64,000 bases of DNA, from the NCBI GenBank assembly GCA_053919585.1, contig CM132810.1; one strand, given 5' to 3'. Source of the DNA: Euprymna scolopes. Its lineage: Eukaryota. Positions 14,381-22,760 of the stretch are shown one piece after another (the first letter of the stretch is position 1; each line of letters begins with the position of its first letter). Both the position numbers and the translations under genes were made by a program. The notes beneath the pieces were generated by a model. It saw nothing but the letters and a program-made list of their open reading frames with translations. It ran no database searches and had not been told where the DNA came from.

Positions 14381-17079
14381 TTTCACTTTTATAGATATAT
14401 TAGCATTTCAGCCTGGTGTTGCCCGGGTGTTTGGAGGTGTATGTTAAGCAAAAAAAAAACAAACAAAAAACGGTCAATTTTTTAAGATTTGACCCCTATT
14501 ATGACCTCTTAACATTTATTGTTTTGGGCTCAAATCGAGTTATTAAGTTAGATCCATGTCCCAGGAACCTATCTCTAAAATTTCATGTGTTTAGACCCAA
14601 TATTGTCGGAGGAGTTTGGTAGAGTTTTCAAATGTTAAATCGTTGAACTTTGACCCCTTAACAGTCAAATTTCTGGCCGAAAACAGATTACAAAGATTTT
14701 CCCAAATCTCAGTACGTTCGACCTTCACCTGGCAAATTTCATTTTTTTTAATTTTCACACTTTTGCACCGATTTTTCCGGGCTAAAACCCAAATATGAAG
14801 TTTTGCATGGATTCACATACCTTATATATGAAGTTTCATGTCTGTAGACATAAAACTCTAGGAGGAGTTTAGTAGGCAAAATTTGTTAAACAAAAATATA
14901 TATGTATACATAAATATATATGGAAACAATTTTGTGTTTAATATAAACTTTTTACGTAAATATTAATGCAAGTATACATCATGTAGAATATCTGCATGAA
15001 TATAATTACACGTAATAGTAAACTAAAGATGATTATCCCATTAGAAAACCGAAGCAACTAATACGGAATTAATTAAAATGTATGTTTAAAAGAATATGCA
15101 AATTAGCTAGATCTTTTGCTAGTGAATGCAATTCCACAACCCATGTATAAGAAAATTGTATTTTCTTTTTAATAAATAGAAAAGAGGGTTTTTAATATGA
15201 ATATCAATAAACACAAAAGAGAAACGAATTTATAGGAGTATAGATAGATATAGATAGAAGATAGATAGACTAGCATTTCAGCCCAGCGTTGCCCGAGTGT
15301 TTGGATGTGTCTGTTGAGCAAAAAAAAAAAAAGTGGTAGTAGGAAGGCAGGCTTGAACCCGTACTGTGAAGGAGGGAAAGAATGGGGAAAAAAACCTGAC
15401 ATCTATGCTGTTACGACCACCACCAAACCGGAAGTGACATTTTTTAAAATTAAGGCTAGACAATTGAAAGGAGAGGATGACTTTCAAAAATATCAGCGAA
15501 AAAAATCGACCCCCACTGTAGAAAAGGTCTCAGTTGAAGGTGAAGATATTAATGTTTTTAGCCAATTTTTCGATATTTGTCGTCTGAAAGCTAGGACTTT
15601 AAAACGATACTGATCTTGGTAAAATCTGTCACCTTTGTCGAAAGTTTTAGGCAGACATGCAAACATACATACATACATTTATATATTGGTAACTAAAAAT
15701 TTTCGACCCAAGCCGATTAAAAAGCTAGCCCTATCTCTGAATACCCTTTATGTAAAATTTCAAATGTTTAGACCAGAAATTATCTTTAGTAATTTGGTAG
15801 AGACTGCAGAGGTCAATTGTTTTTAACTTTGACCTCTATTATGACCCCTTAAAATTAAGTTATTAAGTTAGATCCATGTCCAATGAAACTATATCTAAAA
15901 TTTCACGTGTTTAGACCCAAAATTGTCGGAGGAGTTTGGTAGAGTTCTTAAAGATCAAATCGTTGAACTTTGACCCCTTTAACAGCCAAATTTCTGGCCG
16001 AAAACGGATTACAAATATTTTCCCAAATCTCAGTACCCTGTATATCAAATTTCGAGTCTGTAGACTGAAAGTTGACGGAGTTATTGTGTAGGGAAATGTA
16101 CACAGACAGACAGACACTTTCACTTTTATAGATATATAGATATATGTACTTCATTTAGATGTACATGTTTATACTATAAACCTAAATTAGATGAATATAA
16201 CAAGTGACATAACTCTGATTATGACTAACAAAAATTATGGCCCTTCGCATTGTTTAACAATCGCTGACATAACTAATACAACTTTATACGTTACTAGAAT
16301 TACAGGCCGGTGTTGCCCGGGTGTTTGGAGGTGTATGCTGAGCAAAAAAAAACAAACAAAAAAAACAGTCAATTTTTTTAACTTTTACCCTTATTATGAC
16401 CCCTTAAAATTTATTGTTTTGGGCTTAAATCAATTTATTAAGTTAGATCCATGTCCAAAGAAACTATATCTAAAATTTAACGTGTTTAGACCCAAAATTG
16501 TTGGAGGAATTTGGTAGAGTTCTCAAAGGTCAAATCGTTGAACTTTGACTCCTTAACAGTCAAATTTCTGGCCGAAAACCGATCACATCGATTTTCCCAA
16601 ATCTCAGTACCCTGTATATCAAATTTCGAGTCTGTAGACTAAAAATTGACAGAATTATTGCATAGGAAAATGTACACAGACAGACAGACACTCAGATACA
16701 CAGACAGACACACAGACACGTTCACTTTTACAAGATATATAGATAGATAGATAGACTAATAGATTAAACAAAAATATATACGTATGCATAAATATATACG
16801 GAAACAATTTTTTGTTTACTGTAAAGATTTTACGCAAATATTATGCAAGTATAAATCATGTAGAATATCTGCATGAATATAATTACATGTAATAGTTAAC
16901 TCTAGATGATCATCCCATAATAAAAGCGAAAAAACTACTAGGGAATTAATTAAAATGAATGTTTAAAAGAATATGCAAATTAGCTACATCTTTTGCAGAC
17001 GAATTCAATTCCATTATCCATATATAAGAAAATTGTATTTTCTTTTTAAATAAATAGAAAAGAGGCTTGCCTTTTTTCT

Positions 17080-17122
17080 GTTGTTCTTGGCTTCGGGCCG
17101 GATCAAAGTGTAGTATCTGTTC
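17080..17122 (+). pseudogene. U2: U2 snRNA 5' fragment (divergent stem I plus branch-point recognition sequence)
   Basis: GATCAAAGTGTAGTATCTGTTC (17101-17122) matches the invertebrate-type U2 branch-site-pairing region. Upstream TTCTTGGCTTCGGGCCG resembles stem I. Confidence 0.8.
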
Positions 17123-17379
17123 CGGCAGATGCTGCACTTAAGATAATTTGTACCAGTCAATGGAGGGGAAACCCTCTATACTGGGACAATTATTATTTTT
17201 GGTAACCAGAGTGCCCCCTTTTTGCCTACTTTTAGGGGAGCTGGTTTTTACCTCACATTAAAAACGGCCTTGTGCCTAATTTGCTCAGTGGGGGAGCAAA
17301 TAAATACCATCTGTTCTGCAGATGCTGCACTTGAGATAATTTGTACCAGTCAATGGAGGGGAAACCCTCTATACTGGGA

Positions 17380-17608
17380 ACCGCCTGGGTAATACCTAGG
17401 AGGTCCACCCTCCCAGGCCTTGCCACCGGGCTTTCCGGTGGGGCAAGTTTATTGCTTGCTGCCTGAGGCGCCCCGACCGGGGAATGCCGACGGGGTTACT
17501 CAGGCAATTTTTAAAATTGCAGGAGTGCCCCTCCTTTAGGGGAGCCTGCGGGGTTCCCACTTTCCGGCCTTGTGCCACATAATGCTGATGTGGGCAGCAT
17601 TTAAATAA
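17380..17608 (+). mobile_element. 229-bp GC-rich structured retroposon nested in unit 2, with 18-bp TSD
   Basis: TSD AAACCCTCTATACTGGGA at 17362-17379 and 17609-17626, with an AAATAA tail. Shares GAGTGCCCC, AGGGGAGC and CGGCCTTGTGCC with the host units. Confidence 0.85.
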
Positions 17609-19449
17609 AAACCCTCTATACTGGGACAATTATTAATTTTGGTAACCAGAGTGCCCCCTTTTTGCCTACTTTTAGGGGAGCTGGTTTTTACCTCACATTA
17701 AAAACGGCCTTGTGCCTAATTTGCTCAGTGGGGGAGCAAATAAATACCATCTGTTCTGCAGATGCTGCACTTGAGATAATTTGTACCAGTTAATGGAGGA
17801 GAACCCTCTATACTGGGATAATTATTATCTTTGGTAACCAGAGTGCCCGCTTTTTTCCTACTTTTAGGGGAGCTGGTTTTTATCCCACACTAAAAACGGC
17901 CTTGTACCTAATTTGCTTTGGTGGGGAAGCAAATAAATACATTAAATAAATAGAAAAGAGGGTTTTTAATATGAATATCAATACACACAAAAGAAAAACG
18001 AATTTATAGGAGTATAGATAGATATTGACTTACCTTTCTCATATAAAGACGTATTTCCTTCTATATTAATTGATAAAAAATATGTTCTTCAATATATTAC
18101 AGAATATTAGTAAAACAATAAAAAAATATTTTTGCATTTTAACATGAATAATAATATTTCAGGGAAGAAAAATAATTTCGTTTTTATTTTCTTAGTGTAT
18201 ATTTTGAAAAGAAAAATTTCAATGTGTTCATTCTCCTGACAGAAGAGTTAGAAATGTAAATAAAACATCAACAGACAAAGATCTAAAAATAAAGACAAAA
18301 ATTCACATTTGAAGAAAGAAAAAAATGTCATGAAATTTGGGTTGGTTGCACATATTTTTCTCTATCAAAGAAACATATGCACGTAGACTTTAATTTCTTT
18401 TTTTTTTTTAACAGTTGCAACGGATAGCATGGATTATGTATAAACAATTGAACTGAATTGCATTTACAAAAATGAAACTTGTCAGCATTAGAGAGAACTA
18501 CCTAATAATATTGACATCCGGTTTGAACTAATGTAAATGTTGATTATTATCCATGGAAAATACTTGGAAATTTTTAAATAAAATATAAAAAATCTATTTG
18601 TAATGATTGAATTAATAAATACAAGATTAGCCACATGTCTCGTCGAAGATAATTGCTCAACTAAAATCATAAAAAATGCTGACAGTTTTTTTCTGTTCCT
18701 TTAAAACTAAGTCAGCACGTTTAGATTCTGAACATCCTTGGATAATCCATCTGTTGTAATGGTATACATTTCTTTTTCAATGCGAGCTTGTAGATTAGGT
18801 AAATAGATAGACTTGGTATAATGATAAACATGAACCTTTAGGTAACCTCAGAGCCTATAGTATAGGGGAATTGAGGTCATCTGAACATTTAATTTCTTCT
18901 GATGATAAGTGACTCCTTTGAGGAAGCCCCCTAACTAAATATGCTGAATTGGAAGATGGGAGAAATGTCAAACATTTATTATGACTTTAACATAAACAAC
19001 TATTGTTTCCGATTATAAAATCAATAAAAGTTTACTTATTTCGGTTTTCATATTCATATGTAGTTAAGTAGACATGTATTTACTATTTGAATCATTATAA
19101 ATAAGAAACTTTTGAAACATACACACTATCAGAAAATCAAATTGCAACAATTTAAAGGAGAACAATGTTGCTTTGCACCTAGCAAATTCATATATATTCA
19201 TATCTGCACGTTTGGCAGAAGGAGGAGGAGGAGGAGGAGGAGAATATTCTTTGAACATTTAATGGAGAACCTCATCCTAATGTATCGGATCACAGGCTGT
19301 TCAATTCAGGAGAATTGTGCTGCATGAGACACATAGATGCAACTTTAATATGAGCAACAGAGCATTCGATTAAACATCCATCATACATATTTGCAACATT
19401 TACAATTTGGATGACTTTAAGAAATTGATTTCCAAAGTAACCTATTCCT

Positions 19450-20780: not shown

Positions 20781-21850
20781 TTAATTTATGCAAAGCCAAC
20801 CAGGTAACTTGTTTTGCCTGCCAAAAGCTTTCTTCAGGTTCACAAAGGCAAAATACAGGGTTTTTTTTTCATACAAAAATATGCTTTGCATTTGTTTGGT
20901 ACTTTGCCCAAGTATAAAACCAAATTGCATTTGATATATACTTACATTACTTCTTATTTGCTGCTCAGTTATTCTCTTAATTACTTTCAAGACTTGATCC
21001 ATCAATTACAAACCTACGTAATTATCTCATATATAGCATAACCACGCTGACACACTGTTTCCCATTAGATCACCAAAATCTAGCAATATTGAGCCTCATC
21101 AGTAGTAAAATGGGTGACTATTTGAAAATACCAGATGCTGTATGTGTTTTCTGCTTATCTTTGTTTTCAGTCATCGTGGATTGTTCCTTACCACTAGAAT
21201 CAAGTAGTGCCATCTTAGGAGAGGTGTGGATAAGGATTAAGCAACCCTTGCTTCACAATTACACTTGCAGCCACCGTTACAAGGGGTATCTATTTACTAA
21301 ACAGAGATCATACATGTAATTACCTCTATCGAGTGTTTCCTATAATCCTTGAAACAACTCAAAATTGTACTAAGTTCCCAGTTTTTTTGTGGGGTGGGGG
21401 ATAACATCTTTTTTGATTTAAGTCTATGATCATCTCATTGTCTGTTTCCCTAACAGCCTCCAACATTTCTCCAACATTTCTGCAACAATGCCTGAGGGCC
21501 TTGCAGCCTTACCCTTCTTCATCTTACAGCTTCTCATACTATTTCTTTCTCAATTCTTACAGTTATACCAAATACTGATTCTTACTAGCACCTATGCTTT
21601 TGCCTTTGATATACTTTTCAACTTCCTCATTGAACCATCATGTCACCTGATGCCTTGAGGAACTTTCTGTCCACCCATAACTATAGTATGTTACATCTAA
21701 AAATCTATCTCTCAGCATCTTCCACTGTTCTACTACATCTATTGTAGTGGGTCGGATAGATGAACGCTCCATCATTTGGTCTTTAAACTCACATTTCACA
21801 TGTTCTTCATTCAATCTCTACACCTTTCTCTTCATAATAAACTTTCTATT
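20780..21850 (-). mobile_element. Degenerate RTE-type LINE RT fragment interrupted by a SINE3
   Basis: ORF 20781..21005 has QMQFGFILGQST...LYFAFVNLKKAF. MKKGKAARPSG lies near 21500. Confidence 0.7.
21030..21295 (+). mobile_element. 5S rRNA-derived SINE (SINE3-like)
   Basis: The head CATAACCACGCTGACACAC..CCCATTAGATCACCAAAATCTAGCAA...AGTAGTAAAATGGGTGACT..GAAAATACCAGATGCTGTA resembles 5S rRNA. The body is shared with 22320-22588. Confidence 0.7.
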
Positions 21851-21899: not shown

Positions 21900-22760
21900 A
21901 CTTGCTGTCATATAGAATATCACATGGAAAGATTATGTGATATAGAATATTGCATGGATAGATGTATGGATATCGCATGGATAGAATAGATGTCTTATAG
22001 AATATTGCATGCATGTCTTATAGAATATCACATACATGGATTAGATGTTGTATAGATTATTACCTGGATATATAAGATGTCATAGGATATCAGATGGGTA
22101 GAGTAGATGTCATATAGAATACCACATGGATAGATTAGATATCATTAATAATATCAAATGGATAGATTAGATGTCTCATAGAATATCACATAGACAGAAT
22201 ATCTTATAGAATATTTCATACATAAATTAGATTAGGATATCACATTGATCGATTAAATGTCATATAGAATATCAGATGGATAGATTAGATGATGATGCCT
22301 CCGTTCAGTCTCGAAAGACAAAGGATACCCCTTGTAAGGGTGGCTGCATGTGTAATTGTGTGGCAAGAGTTGCAAAATCTCCAACCCAACCTCTCTTAAA
22401 TCAGCACTGCTTGAGTCCAGTGGCAAGGAAAAGTCCAGAACAACTGGAAACAATGCCGAGATAAGCAGAGAGCACATGCAGCACCTGAAAGTCACAAATA
22501 GTCACCCATCTGGTACTGGCCAGGCTCATCATTGCTTAACTTTGGTGATCTGACGGGAACCGGTGTGCCAAATGTGATGATGCTGTATATAGATTAGATA
22601 CCTTATAGAATATCACATGGATAGAAAAGATATGAATAAACTAAATATCGAATAGAATGTCACATGGAAAGAATAGATGTCTTATAGATTTGATGCCATG
22701 CATAGATTTGATGCCATATAGAAAATCACATGGATAGATTAGATGTTGTATAGAATGTAA
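21900..22760. repeat. Degenerate ~30-bp minisatellite (ATGTCATATAGAATATCACATGGATAGATTAG) interrupted by a SINE3
   Basis: The TAGAATATCACATGGATAG motif recurs throughout. Confidence 0.8.
22320..22588 (-). mobile_element. 5S rRNA-derived SINE (SINE3-like), inverted relative to the 21030 copy
   Basis: GTCACCCATCTGGTACTGGCCAGGCTCATCATTGCTTAACTTTGGTGATCTGACGGGAACCGGTG is reverse-complement 5S-like sequence. Confidence 0.75.

What the first reader, a model, noticed from the sequence alone, without database searches (positions are those of the whole stretch)
17204..17941. Covarying kissing-loop 3' RNA fold shared by the tandem units and the divergent nested element
Seen in all four sequences, in the same order. 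First, a stem with an AGUG/AG internal loop (ACCAG..CCCC/GGGG..CUGGU versus GCAGG..CCCCU/AGGGG..CCUGC). Second, hairpin A with loop CCUCAC, UCCCAC or CCCAC. Third, a near-invariant GGC-CUUGU-GCC mini-hairpin (ACC in unit 3). Fourth, terminal hairpin B with loop GUGGG(G), complementary to loop A, followed by AAAUAAA. Stems change compensatorily (UUUGCUC/GAGCAAA, UUUGCUU/AAGCAAA, AUGCUG/CAGCAU) while the loop-loop complementarity is kept. Inference: a selected tertiary RNA element, most simply the RT-recognition signal of a partner LINE, although another activity cannot be excluded.
Basis: partly seen in the sequence, partly recalled or inferred. Interest (0 to 1): 0.72.

Follow-up and report, generated by a model that had tools for sequence, protein, structure and literature searches.

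The report
Structured SINE tail, kissing loop unproven
Four copies of short parasitic retroelements in a large mollusc genome end in the same folded RNA tail. Compensating mutations keep its stems, and its core is shared with LINEs that insert into U2 snRNA genes, so it is most likely the handle their reverse transcriptase grabs; the proposed loop-to-loop contact is possible but not shown.

Summary
All four sequences carry, in the same order, a two-part stem (S1), a CCNCAC motif, the GGCCUUGUGCC mini-hairpin (MH), a terminal hairpin (HB) with a GUGGG loop, and an AAUAAA-rich end.

- **What the sequences are.** They are three A-type units of a U2-snRNA-headed SINE array and a young nested SINE (N).
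- **Covariation.** Across about 10 subfamilies, S1, MH and HB change on both sides while staying paired. The covariation score is 0.21, against 0.10 for shuffles and at most 0.09 for slid controls.
- **Shared with LINEs.** MH, a hairpin and the A-rich end also close the 3' UTR of LINEs inserted in this genome's real U2 gene array. That part is most likely the reverse-transcriptase handle of a stringent LINE/SINE pair.
- **Not shared.** S1 and the GUGGG loop are absent from every LINE tail sampled. The hairpin A stem is missing in two abundant SINE families (B and C).
- **Loop-loop pairing.** Only wobble-compatible changes occur, with a 1-nt register slip between A and N. Shuffle p is 0.0005-0.07 in A and N and not significant in B and C. 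The kissing loop therefore stays a hypothesis (about 40%).
- **Other checks.** No Rfam family or ribozyme matches.

This scan had already noted the LINE-SINE tail module and the U2-headed arrays on other DNA of this genome.

The parts
17046..17068 (+). left copy of a 23-nt direct repeat flanking head + array (right copy 17942-17964)
   Evidence: 22 of 23 identical. The same sequence plus upstream flank precedes the head in 9 of 29 other loci. Contigs join 17065 directly to the right flank, i.e. an empty site. Whether it is a TSD or part of a host repeat is not settled.
17069..17114 (+). head: diverged copy of the first ~46 nt of U2 snRNA, ending ...GATCAAAGTGTAGTATCTGTTC
   Evidence: Weak Rfam U2 hit. 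Direct comparison with the real U2 gene and with the LINE 5' junction, which lies right after ATCTGTTC.
17115..17307 (+). A-type unit 1; 3' module at 17203-17307
   Evidence: 130.6 bits.
17205..17245 (+). S1 of unit 1: ACCAG/CUGGU and CCCC/GGGG with an AGUG/AG internal loop
   Evidence: Three of 5 outer pairs change on both sides between the A and N families. In the B and C families it is a continuous helix.
17246..17263 (+). weak hairpin A (UUUUA/UAAAA) presenting CCUCAC (17251-17256)
   Evidence: in the MFE of the whole module only. The stem is absent in B and C units.
17266..17276 (+). MH motif GGCCUUGUGCC (also at 17566-76, 17706-16 and 17898-908, the last with GUACC)
   Evidence: Kept in all LINE tails. 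The middle pair is G-C or A-U in different lineages.
17280..17308 (+). HB (UUUGCUC-AGUGGGG-GAGCAAA) plus the UAAAUACC end, which contains AAUAAA
   Evidence: Three of 7 pairs change on both sides; 98.6% of cells are paired.
17308..17380 (+). 5' part of A-type unit 2, up to the N insertion
17381..17609 (+). nested 229-nt SINE N. Module: S1 GCAGG 17519-23 / CCUGC 17545-49; GGGG 17550-53 / UUCC 17562-65 with CCCAC 17556-60; MH 17566-76; HB AAUGCUG 17581-87 / CAGCAUU 17595-601 with loop AUGUGGG
   Evidence: At least 44 copies in the genome are 100% identical. Flanked by the 17-nt duplication AACCCTCTATACTGGGA. Model hit of 51.2 bits.
17610..17747 (+). rest of A-type unit 2; 3' module at 17643-17747
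17748..17941 (+). A-type unit 3, older A2 subfamily; module 17835-17940 with UCCCAC, GGCCUUGUACC and UUUGCUU/AAGCAAA
   Evidence: 91% identity to unit 1. (the same variants in L012).

Best explanation
The stretch holds four copies of one LINE-derived, folded 3' domain of non-autonomous retroposons. Three are A-type units stacked behind a U2-snRNA-like head; the fourth is a young SINE (N) inserted into one of them.

Shown:
- The domain has at least three helices kept by selection in the master copies: S1, the GGC/GCC mini-hairpin (MH) and the terminal hairpin HB.
- The sequence 'invariant GGCC(U/A)UGUGCC-UAA, then a hairpin, then an AAUAAA-rich end without poly(A)' also closes the 3' UTR of LINEs inserted at U2 nt 24|25-46 in the genome's real U2 array and in U2-like heads elsewhere.

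Inferred:
- MH, HB and the A-rich end are the handle by which the LINE ORF2 protein picks its template and starts target-primed reverse transcription, as in stringent LINE/SINE pairs.
- SINE RNAs carrying this handle are copied into U2-like sites. Because each copy brings or keeps a U2-like head, arrays grow at the head, with the youngest unit next to it.
- S1, the CCNCAC motif and the GUGGG loop are additions of the SINE lineage. CCNCAC and GUGGG can pair (5-6 bp), as a kissing contact in A and N or as a pseudoknot in B and C. This pairing is not needed by the LINE tails and is not demonstrated.
For: Anatomy.

Real U2 array with about 7-kb insertions.

LINE ends:
- The LINE 3' end reads ...AGGGCCUUGUGCCUAA + UUUUGUUG...CAAUAAAA + UAAAUAAAUAA | GATCAAAGTG.
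- The 5' junction lies after ATCTGTTC, giving a 22-nt TSD.
- The ORF end carries a zf-RVT domain.
- Four further diverged LINE-type tails have the same order of parts and a U2 junction.

Covariation:
- S1 outer helix is ACCAG/CUGGU in A, GCAGG/CCUGC in N and GCAAG/CUU(G)C in old N copies. B and C have CCAGCUCCC/GGGAGCUGG.
- The HB closing pair is C-G, U-A or G-C. Its first two pairs are UU/AA or AA/UU.
- MH is GGC/GCC or GAC/GUC, the latter in four A3 copies and two old N copies.

Array age gradient, with the oldest unit at the 3' end.

The A-unit body is homologous to the LINE 3' UTR, including a hairpin that covaries at 4 pairs.
Against: - No binding or retrotransposition data exist.
- The direct partner LINE of the A, B and C units is not pinned down. 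Most unit junctions lie before ATCTGTTC (8 nt kept), whereas the sampled LINEs join before (GATC)AAAGTG.
- N inserts at a different target (GGGGNA|AACCC), so at least two enzymes or specificities are involved.
- MH is almost invariant, so its stem rests on one covarying pair, and the A2 subfamily spread with a C.A mismatch there.
- In the LINE tails RNAalifold prefers other partners for the MH bases.
- Single-sequence stabilities are unremarkable.
- The covariance-model alignment leans towards its own structure, and the sequences are related by descent.
Confidence: 0.65

Rival explanations
1. The loop-loop pairing CCNCAC/GUGGG(G) is real and selected. It would be a SINE-specific tertiary lock (a kissing complex in A and N, an H-type pseudoknot in B and C) that compacts the tail, for instance to compete for the RT or to protect the 3' end. 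This adds to the best explanation rather than replacing it.
For: - At least 5 contiguous pairs are possible in every subfamily seen in two or more loci. These are CCUCAC, CCCCAC, CUCCAC and UCCCAC opposite GUGGGG, and CCCAC opposite GUGGG.
- Master-level changes in the hexamer are all C/U opposite G, while the G run never changes.
- In the N2 subfamily one end pair is lost on both sides and a U-A pair is gained at the other end, keeping 5 bp. N2 makes up about a quarter of N-type depth in run X1.
- Shuffle p values are 0.0005-0.07 in A and N.
- Duplex energies are -8 to -12 kcal/mol.
Against: - No pair changes on both sides in register.
- The register differs by 1 nt between A and N, so column-wise pairing is only 75%.
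- In B and C the G-rich loop finds equally good partners in the polypyrimidine tract (p 0.65-0.71).
- The sampled LINE tails have no GUGGG loop, although several carry CCCAC or CCUCAC upstream of MH. The motif can therefore be kept without that partner.
- Nested MFE folds use the same bases in a competing long-range helix.
Confidence: 0.4
2. The module serves RNA 3'-end formation or stability of Pol II read-through transcripts (an AAUAAA hexamer with upstream hairpins), rather than RT recognition.
For: - Every tail contains AAUAAA near its end.
- U2 genes are Pol II units and the head lies where a U2 promoter would drive transcription.
- The repeats are present in poly(A)-selected RNA-seq assemblies.
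Against: - Copies end 3-4 nt after AAUAAA, without poly(A). This is too close for a cleavage site and typical of RT initiation at a fixed tail.
- The contigs cannot show RNA ends or even prove transcription.
- This reading does not explain why LINE and SINE share MH.
Confidence: 0.12
3. There is no RNA-level selection. The four tails look alike by common descent, and the apparent compensation is chance or hitch-hiking among related copies.
For: - The sequences are related, and the shuffle controls ignore relatedness (tool caveat).
- Units 1 and 2 are near-identical.
- Folding z-scores are near zero.
Against: - All three differences in each strand of the S1 outer helix between A and N are mutually compensating.
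- The HB closing pair occurs as three different Watson-Crick pairs.
- Slid-partner controls, which keep relatedness, give less than half the observed score.
Confidence: 0.05
4. The element is a self-cleaving ribozyme.
Against: No Rfam ribozyme family matches at the gathering threshold or at E up to 10. The only hit is RAGATH-13 noise on the opposite strand (16 bits against 80 needed). No known catalytic core motif is present.
Confidence: 0.02

Closest known systems
Stringent-type LINE/SINE 3' tails (eel UnaL2/UnaSINE1, zebrafish ZfL2; PMC1636434, PMC4176376)
   Same: The SINE and the LINE share a short 3' tail with a conserved stem-loop and no dependence on poly(A). An internal loop in a stem, as in S1 of A and N, is important in UnaL2 according to that paper's abstract. 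The stems are kept by compensation.
   Different: The partner here is a U2-targeting LINE with a zf-RVT C-terminus (earlier notes of this scan call it Tx1-like), not an L2. The shared part is an invariant 11-14-nt motif followed by a hairpin of very variable length (7 bp in the SINEs, 50-90-nt AU-rich in the LINEs). The SINEs add a second stem and a possible loop-loop contact. Nothing has been tested at the bench.
SINEU, snRNA-headed SINEs of crocodilians (PMC4494074)
   Same: The head derives from the 5' part of U2 snRNA. Tandem copies arise by repeated insertion at one site. The presumed partner lies in the Tx1/Keno group.
   Different: SINEU elements carry poly(A) tails, and no structured tail or shared LINE tail was reported for SINEU-1. 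The elements here are from a mollusc genome, end in a structured non-poly(A) tail, and form long arrays of mixed unit types.
Keno (Tx1 clade) and Utopia (RLE) U2-targeting LINEs (PMC4640811)
   Same: They insert into the 5' part of U2 genes. About 20-bp TSDs are seen in some lineages, and tandem insertions occur in U2 arrays.
   Different: I did not establish the clade from a full ORF. The LINE 3' junction here lies before GATCAAAG (U2 nt 24|25), whereas most SINE unit junctions lie before ATCTGTTC. The passages I searched in that paper do not mention a stem-loop or a tail.
R2 3' UTR RNA
   Same: It is a multi-helix 3' RNA recognised by the element's own RT for target-primed reverse transcription at a specific gene. 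This comparison rests on my own knowledge.
   Different: There is no sequence or Rfam relationship. R2 belongs to a different LINE group, and no SINE partner logic was tested here.

Membership tests
Stringent LINE/SINE shared 3' tail | SINE and autonomous LINE share the 3'-terminal sequence | tested here: met
   GGCC(U/A)UGUGCC-UAA + hairpin + AAUAAA-rich end is present in SINE families A, B, C and N and in five LINE-type tails. S1 and the GUGGG loop are not shared.
Stringent LINE/SINE shared 3' tail | conserved stem-loop close to the 3' end, kept by compensatory change | tested here: met
   In HB, 3 of 7 pairs change on both sides and 96-99% of cells are paired. The LINE versions keep a closing stem of different sequence.
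Stringent LINE/SINE shared 3' tail | copies end at a fixed tail without poly(A) | tested here: met
   Copies end in ...AAAUAAAUAC(C) or ...AAAUAAA directly at the junction.
Stringent LINE/SINE shared 3' tail | the tail is required for recognition by the LINE ORF2 protein and for mobilisation | not testable with these tools
   Needs binding and retrotransposition assays.
SINEU (snRNA-headed SINE) | 5' head derived from U1 or U2 snRNA | tested here: met
   The head at 17069-17114 aligns to U2 nt 1-46 and ends where the LINE 5' junction lies. 5'-truncated heads occur at unrelated loci.
SINEU (snRNA-headed SINE) | 3' poly(A) tail | tested here: not met
   No poly(A); the end is a structured A-rich tail. 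It works like SINEU at the head but is not a member by its tail.
Keno/Tx1-clade U2-targeting LINE as partner | APE-type LINE of the Tx1 clade inserted at a fixed U2 site | tested here: inconclusive
   The insertion in the real U2 array with a 22-nt TSD is shown. Only the last 203 aa were read (zf-RVT).
Intramolecular kissing-loop or pseudoknot element | loop-loop base pairs supported by two-sided covariation or probing | tested here: inconclusive
   Complementarity is kept, but only by one-sided C/U changes and a register slip. One possible compensating shift occurs in N2.
Known self-cleaving ribozymes / any Rfam family | match to a curated covariance model | tested here: not met
   There is no hit on the module at the gathering threshold or at E up to 10, apart from noise.

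The most novel reading that the evidence does not exclude
The SINE tail is a true tertiary fold. The CCNCAC and GUGGG loops would lock the helices around the invariant motif, an innovation of the parasites that the LINE itself lacks. The invariant motif GGCCUUGUGCCUAA would in turn imitate, or be a fossil of, U2 stem-loop I (GGCCUUUUGGCUAA, 12 of 14 identical). That stem-loop ends exactly at the LINE's insertion point, so one protein surface might read both the template RNA and the U2 target.
Probability: 0.12. Interest if true: 0.7.

Novelty: new variant of a known kind. Interest (0 to 1): 0.42.

Why it matters
How target-specific LINEs outside the L2 and R2 groups choose their RNA template is poorly known. 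Here a natural series offers a ready-made mutational map of what the reverse transcriptase needs and what it does not. The series comprises five LINE tails and at least ten SINE subfamilies that share one invariant motif and a covarying hairpin. The map makes template recognition by a U2-targeting LINE directly testable.

The result also matters for annotation. The units were abundant in every own-genome search I ran. A published cuttlefish genome paper (PMC13218726) states that decapodiform cephalopod genomes have almost no SINEs. I could not confirm the species of this assembly, and the units would probably be filed as unclassified repeats.

Tried and rejected
- **Rfam.** Searches of the whole window and of the region at E up to 10 gave nothing on the module. 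The ribozyme reading is rejected.
- **Single-sequence folding.** Stability against shuffles was uninformative.
- **Rfam U2 search of the genome.** It failed twice with tool errors.
- **Pattern searches.** A first pattern was too long. A second used the wrong U2 base and found nothing. The corrected U2 pattern found the array.
- **Whole LINE insertions.** The LINE clade and further LINE families could not be studied, and I worked from the 1.5-kb flanks already held.
- **MAFFT alignments.** Alignments of all families mis-register HB and the B/C inserts. I used a covariance model and an A+N-only MAFFT alignment instead.
- **Nested element.** It looked like a simple insertion, but many copies share the same left flank and some are A5'+N+B3' chimeras. 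I did not resolve this.
- **Public runs.** Only contigs were available, so RNA ends, strand and true expression could not be read.
- **Ceph-SINEs.** They are RTE-related elements and have no link to these units.

Full report
**What is at the coordinates**

The window is G000:C28:56854001-56918000 of a 5.9-Gb genome. Earlier notes of this scan call it a mollusc.

Positions 17069-17941 are one composite element flanked by a 23-nt direct repeat. It has four kinds of part:
- A 46-nt head resembles the first 46 nt of U2 snRNA (weak Rfam U2 hit; direct comparison with the real gene).
- Three ~193-nt units follow head to tail. Each restarts at ATCTGTTC, the last 8 nt of the head.
- Unit 2 is split by a 229-nt element, N, bracketed by the 17-nt duplication AACCCTCTATACTGGGA.
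- Unit 3 belongs to an older subfamily, 91% identical to unit 1.

N is very young. At least 44 copies elsewhere are 100% identical to it.

The unit family is also abundant. It usually occurs as long arrays of mixed unit types, which I call A, B and C. B and C share only the last ~57 nt with A at high identity.

**The observation**

- S1 is ACCAG-AGUG-CCCC...GGGG-AG-CUGGU in A units and GCAGG-AGUG-CCCCU...AGGGG-AG-CCUGC in N.
- A short hairpin presents CCUCAC, UCCCAC or CCCAC.
- MH is GGC-CUUGU-GCC.
- HB is UUUGCUC/GAGCAAA, UUUGCUU/AAGCAAA or AAUGCUG/CAGCAUU, with a GUGGG(G) loop.
- The end is A-rich and contains AAUAAA.

Folding energies of single sequences are no better than shuffles. The case therefore rests on comparison between copies.

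**Comparison across subfamilies**

I extracted 364 tail instances from 60 loci and grouped them. Further old copies turned up in the same loci. This gave about ten subfamily-level variants: A1, A1-short, A2, A3, B1, B2, C, N1, N1b, N2 and two old N copies.

*S1.*
- The three differences in each strand of the outer helix between A and N are all mutually compensating.
- Old N copies have GCAAG/CUUGC-type strands.
- B and C replace the AGUG/AG internal loop by Watson-Crick pairs, giving CCAGCUCCC/GGGAGCUGG.

*HB.*
- The closing pair occurs as C-G, U-A and G-C.
- The first two pairs occur as UU/AA or AA/UU.

*MH.*
- It is nearly invariant, but its middle pair is A-U (GAC/GUC) in four A3 copies and in two old N copies.

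*Counts and controls.*

| Alignment | Covariation score | Shuffles | Slid partners |
|---|---|---|---|
| Structure-blind MAFFT, 10 representatives | 0.213 | 0.098 (0 of 500 reach it) | at most 0.090 |
| Covariance model, 66 distinct copies | 0.178 | 0.073 | at most 0.070 |

In the MAFFT alignment HB is 98.6% paired, with 3 of 7 pairs changed on both sides. I take S1 and HB as real, selected helices, and MH as probable.

The A2 subfamily, which includes window unit 3 and a copy in L012, spread with a C.A mismatch in MH. That closing pair is therefore not strictly needed.

**Hairpin A and the loop-loop pairing**

The hairpin A stem is 5-6 A-U pairs in A units and GGGG/UUCC in N. It is absent in the abundant B and C families, where a polypyrimidine tract precedes CCUCAC.

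The complementarity between CCNCAC and the HB loop is kept in every variant seen in two or more loci. The evidence for a real pairing is mixed:
- The only master-level changes are C/U opposite G (helix 4).
- The pairing register differs by one nucleotide between A and N, so column-wise pairing is 75%.
- Composition-preserving shuffles give p = 0.015 for A1, 0.07 for unit 3, 0.0005 for A3 and 0.04 for N.
- The same test gives p = 0.65-0.71 for B1 and C1, where the G-rich loop has many partners.
- The N2 subfamily gives one suggestive event. The end pair is lost on both sides (C to A and G to A), and a U-A pair is gained at the other end, so 5 bp remain.
- N2 is a real subfamily. Its diagnostic letters make up about a quarter of N-type depth in run X1.

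I put the loop-loop pairing at about 40%. In B and C it would be a pseudoknot rather than a kissing complex.

**The partner LINE**

The real U2 genes form a 764-bp array on contig C9, with four gaps of 7.9-8.4 kb between neighbouring repeats, which correspond to ~7-kb insertions. The flanks I already held show a LINE in one of these gaps:
- Its 5' junction lies right after ...GTAGTATCTGTTC.
- Its 3' junction lies right before GATCAAAGTG, which gives a 22-nt target duplication.
- Its ORF ends in a zf-RVT domain.
- Its 3' UTR ends ...CCCUCCCCCUCCC...AGGGCCUUGUGCCUAA, then a long AU-rich hairpin closed by UUUUGUUG/CAAUAAAA, then UAAAUAAAUAA.

Four more diverged LINE-type tails in the fetched loci have the same order of parts and join U2-like sequence at (GATC)AAAGTG.

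The body of the A unit is also homologous to the last ~200 nt of the LINE 3' UTR. That region includes a hairpin that covaries at four pairs.

So MH, a hairpin and the A-rich end form the LINE-SINE shared tail, and the SINE 3' region is LINE-derived. This agrees with an earlier follow-up of this scan on other DNA of this genome (s1-254975).

None of the LINE tails has S1 or a GUGGG loop. Several do carry CCCAC or CCUCAC about 20 nt upstream of MH.

**Mechanism**

Shown:
- the helices and their compensation;
- the shared tail;
- the LINE in the U2 array;
- arrays whose youngest units lie next to the head.

Inferred:
- The LINE ORF2 protein recognises MH, HB and the A-rich end and starts target-primed reverse transcription there.
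- SINE RNAs carrying this handle are copied into U2-like sites, and arrays grow by repeated insertion at the head.

Open:
- Most unit junctions keep only ATCTGTTC, whereas the sampled LINEs duplicate 22 nt. The direct partner of A, B and C may therefore be another LINE.
- N uses a different target, so the handle seems to be shared by enzymes of different specificity.

**Comparison with what is known**

- Stringent LINE/SINE tails with essential stem-loops are established for UnaL2 and ZfL2 (PMC1636434, PMC4176376).
- U2-headed SINEs are known only as crocodilian SINEU, which have poly(A) tails (PMC4494074).
- The known U2-targeting LINEs are Keno and Utopia (PMC4640811).
- A full-text search for kissing contacts in LINE or SINE tails found nothing relevant.

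This is therefore a new variant of a known kind. Only the tertiary contact would be a new feature, and it is unproven.

**Limits**

- No other species could be searched.
- The public runs were contigs only.

Noticed in passing
window 17266-17279; U2 gene in L078 (minus strand, about 790-810): The invariant tail motif GGCCUUGUGCCUAA matches U2 nt 11-24 (GGCCUUUUGGCUAA) at 12 of 14 positions. U2 nt 24|25 is exactly the LINE's 3' junction. By shuffling, 17 of 20000 14-mers and 35 of 1000 whole tails do as well. It could be a fossil U2 fragment in the 3' UTR, or mimicry of the target.
   Followed up: partly
window 17363-17380 and 17610-17626; L037, L036, L050, L058, L041: Element N lands at GGGGNA|AACCC, in the 3' half of a GGGG-GNAA-CCCC hairpin of A and B units, with 17-18-nt duplications. 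L037 shows a longer form with a ~100-nt 5' extension. Some copies are chimeras of an A 5' part, N and a B 3' part, and L041 holds a tandem array of N.
   Followed up: partly
window 16990-17068 and 17942-17990: The left copy of the 23-nt repeat, together with at least 40 nt upstream, precedes the head in 9 of 29 other loci. Contigs of public runs join 17065 directly to the right flank, which is an empty site (table 7). Head and array therefore sit in a repeated host sequence, which earlier notes call a Helentron-like landing pad. Whether the repeat is a TSD or a 5' leader is not settled.
   Followed up: partly
L002-L030 arrays: Within arrays the units next to the head are closest to the family's modal sequence, and the 3'-most unit is the most diverged (for example 100% then 76% in L003). 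This fits growth by repeated insertion at the U2-like head.
   Followed up: partly
L020, L047, L059 (LINE-c); L030, L061 (LINE-d): In these LINE tails the 6-8 nt just upstream of the motif can pair with the very 3' end plus the first U2 bases (CUUUUGAG/CUCAAAG, CACUUC/GAAGUG). That would close a three-way junction around the motif and the long hairpin.
   Followed up: no
window 21029-21146 (+) and 22473-22590 (-): Two 5S rRNA matches lie in opposite orientation, one strong (67 bits) and one exactly at the threshold (38 bits). They may be genes, pseudogenes or 5S-derived repeats.
   Followed up: no
window 16050-16130 and 16590-16730: A ~550-bp repeat ending in (ACAG)n occurs twice just upstream of the element (tandem rows). 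It is another interspersed repeat family.
   Followed up: no
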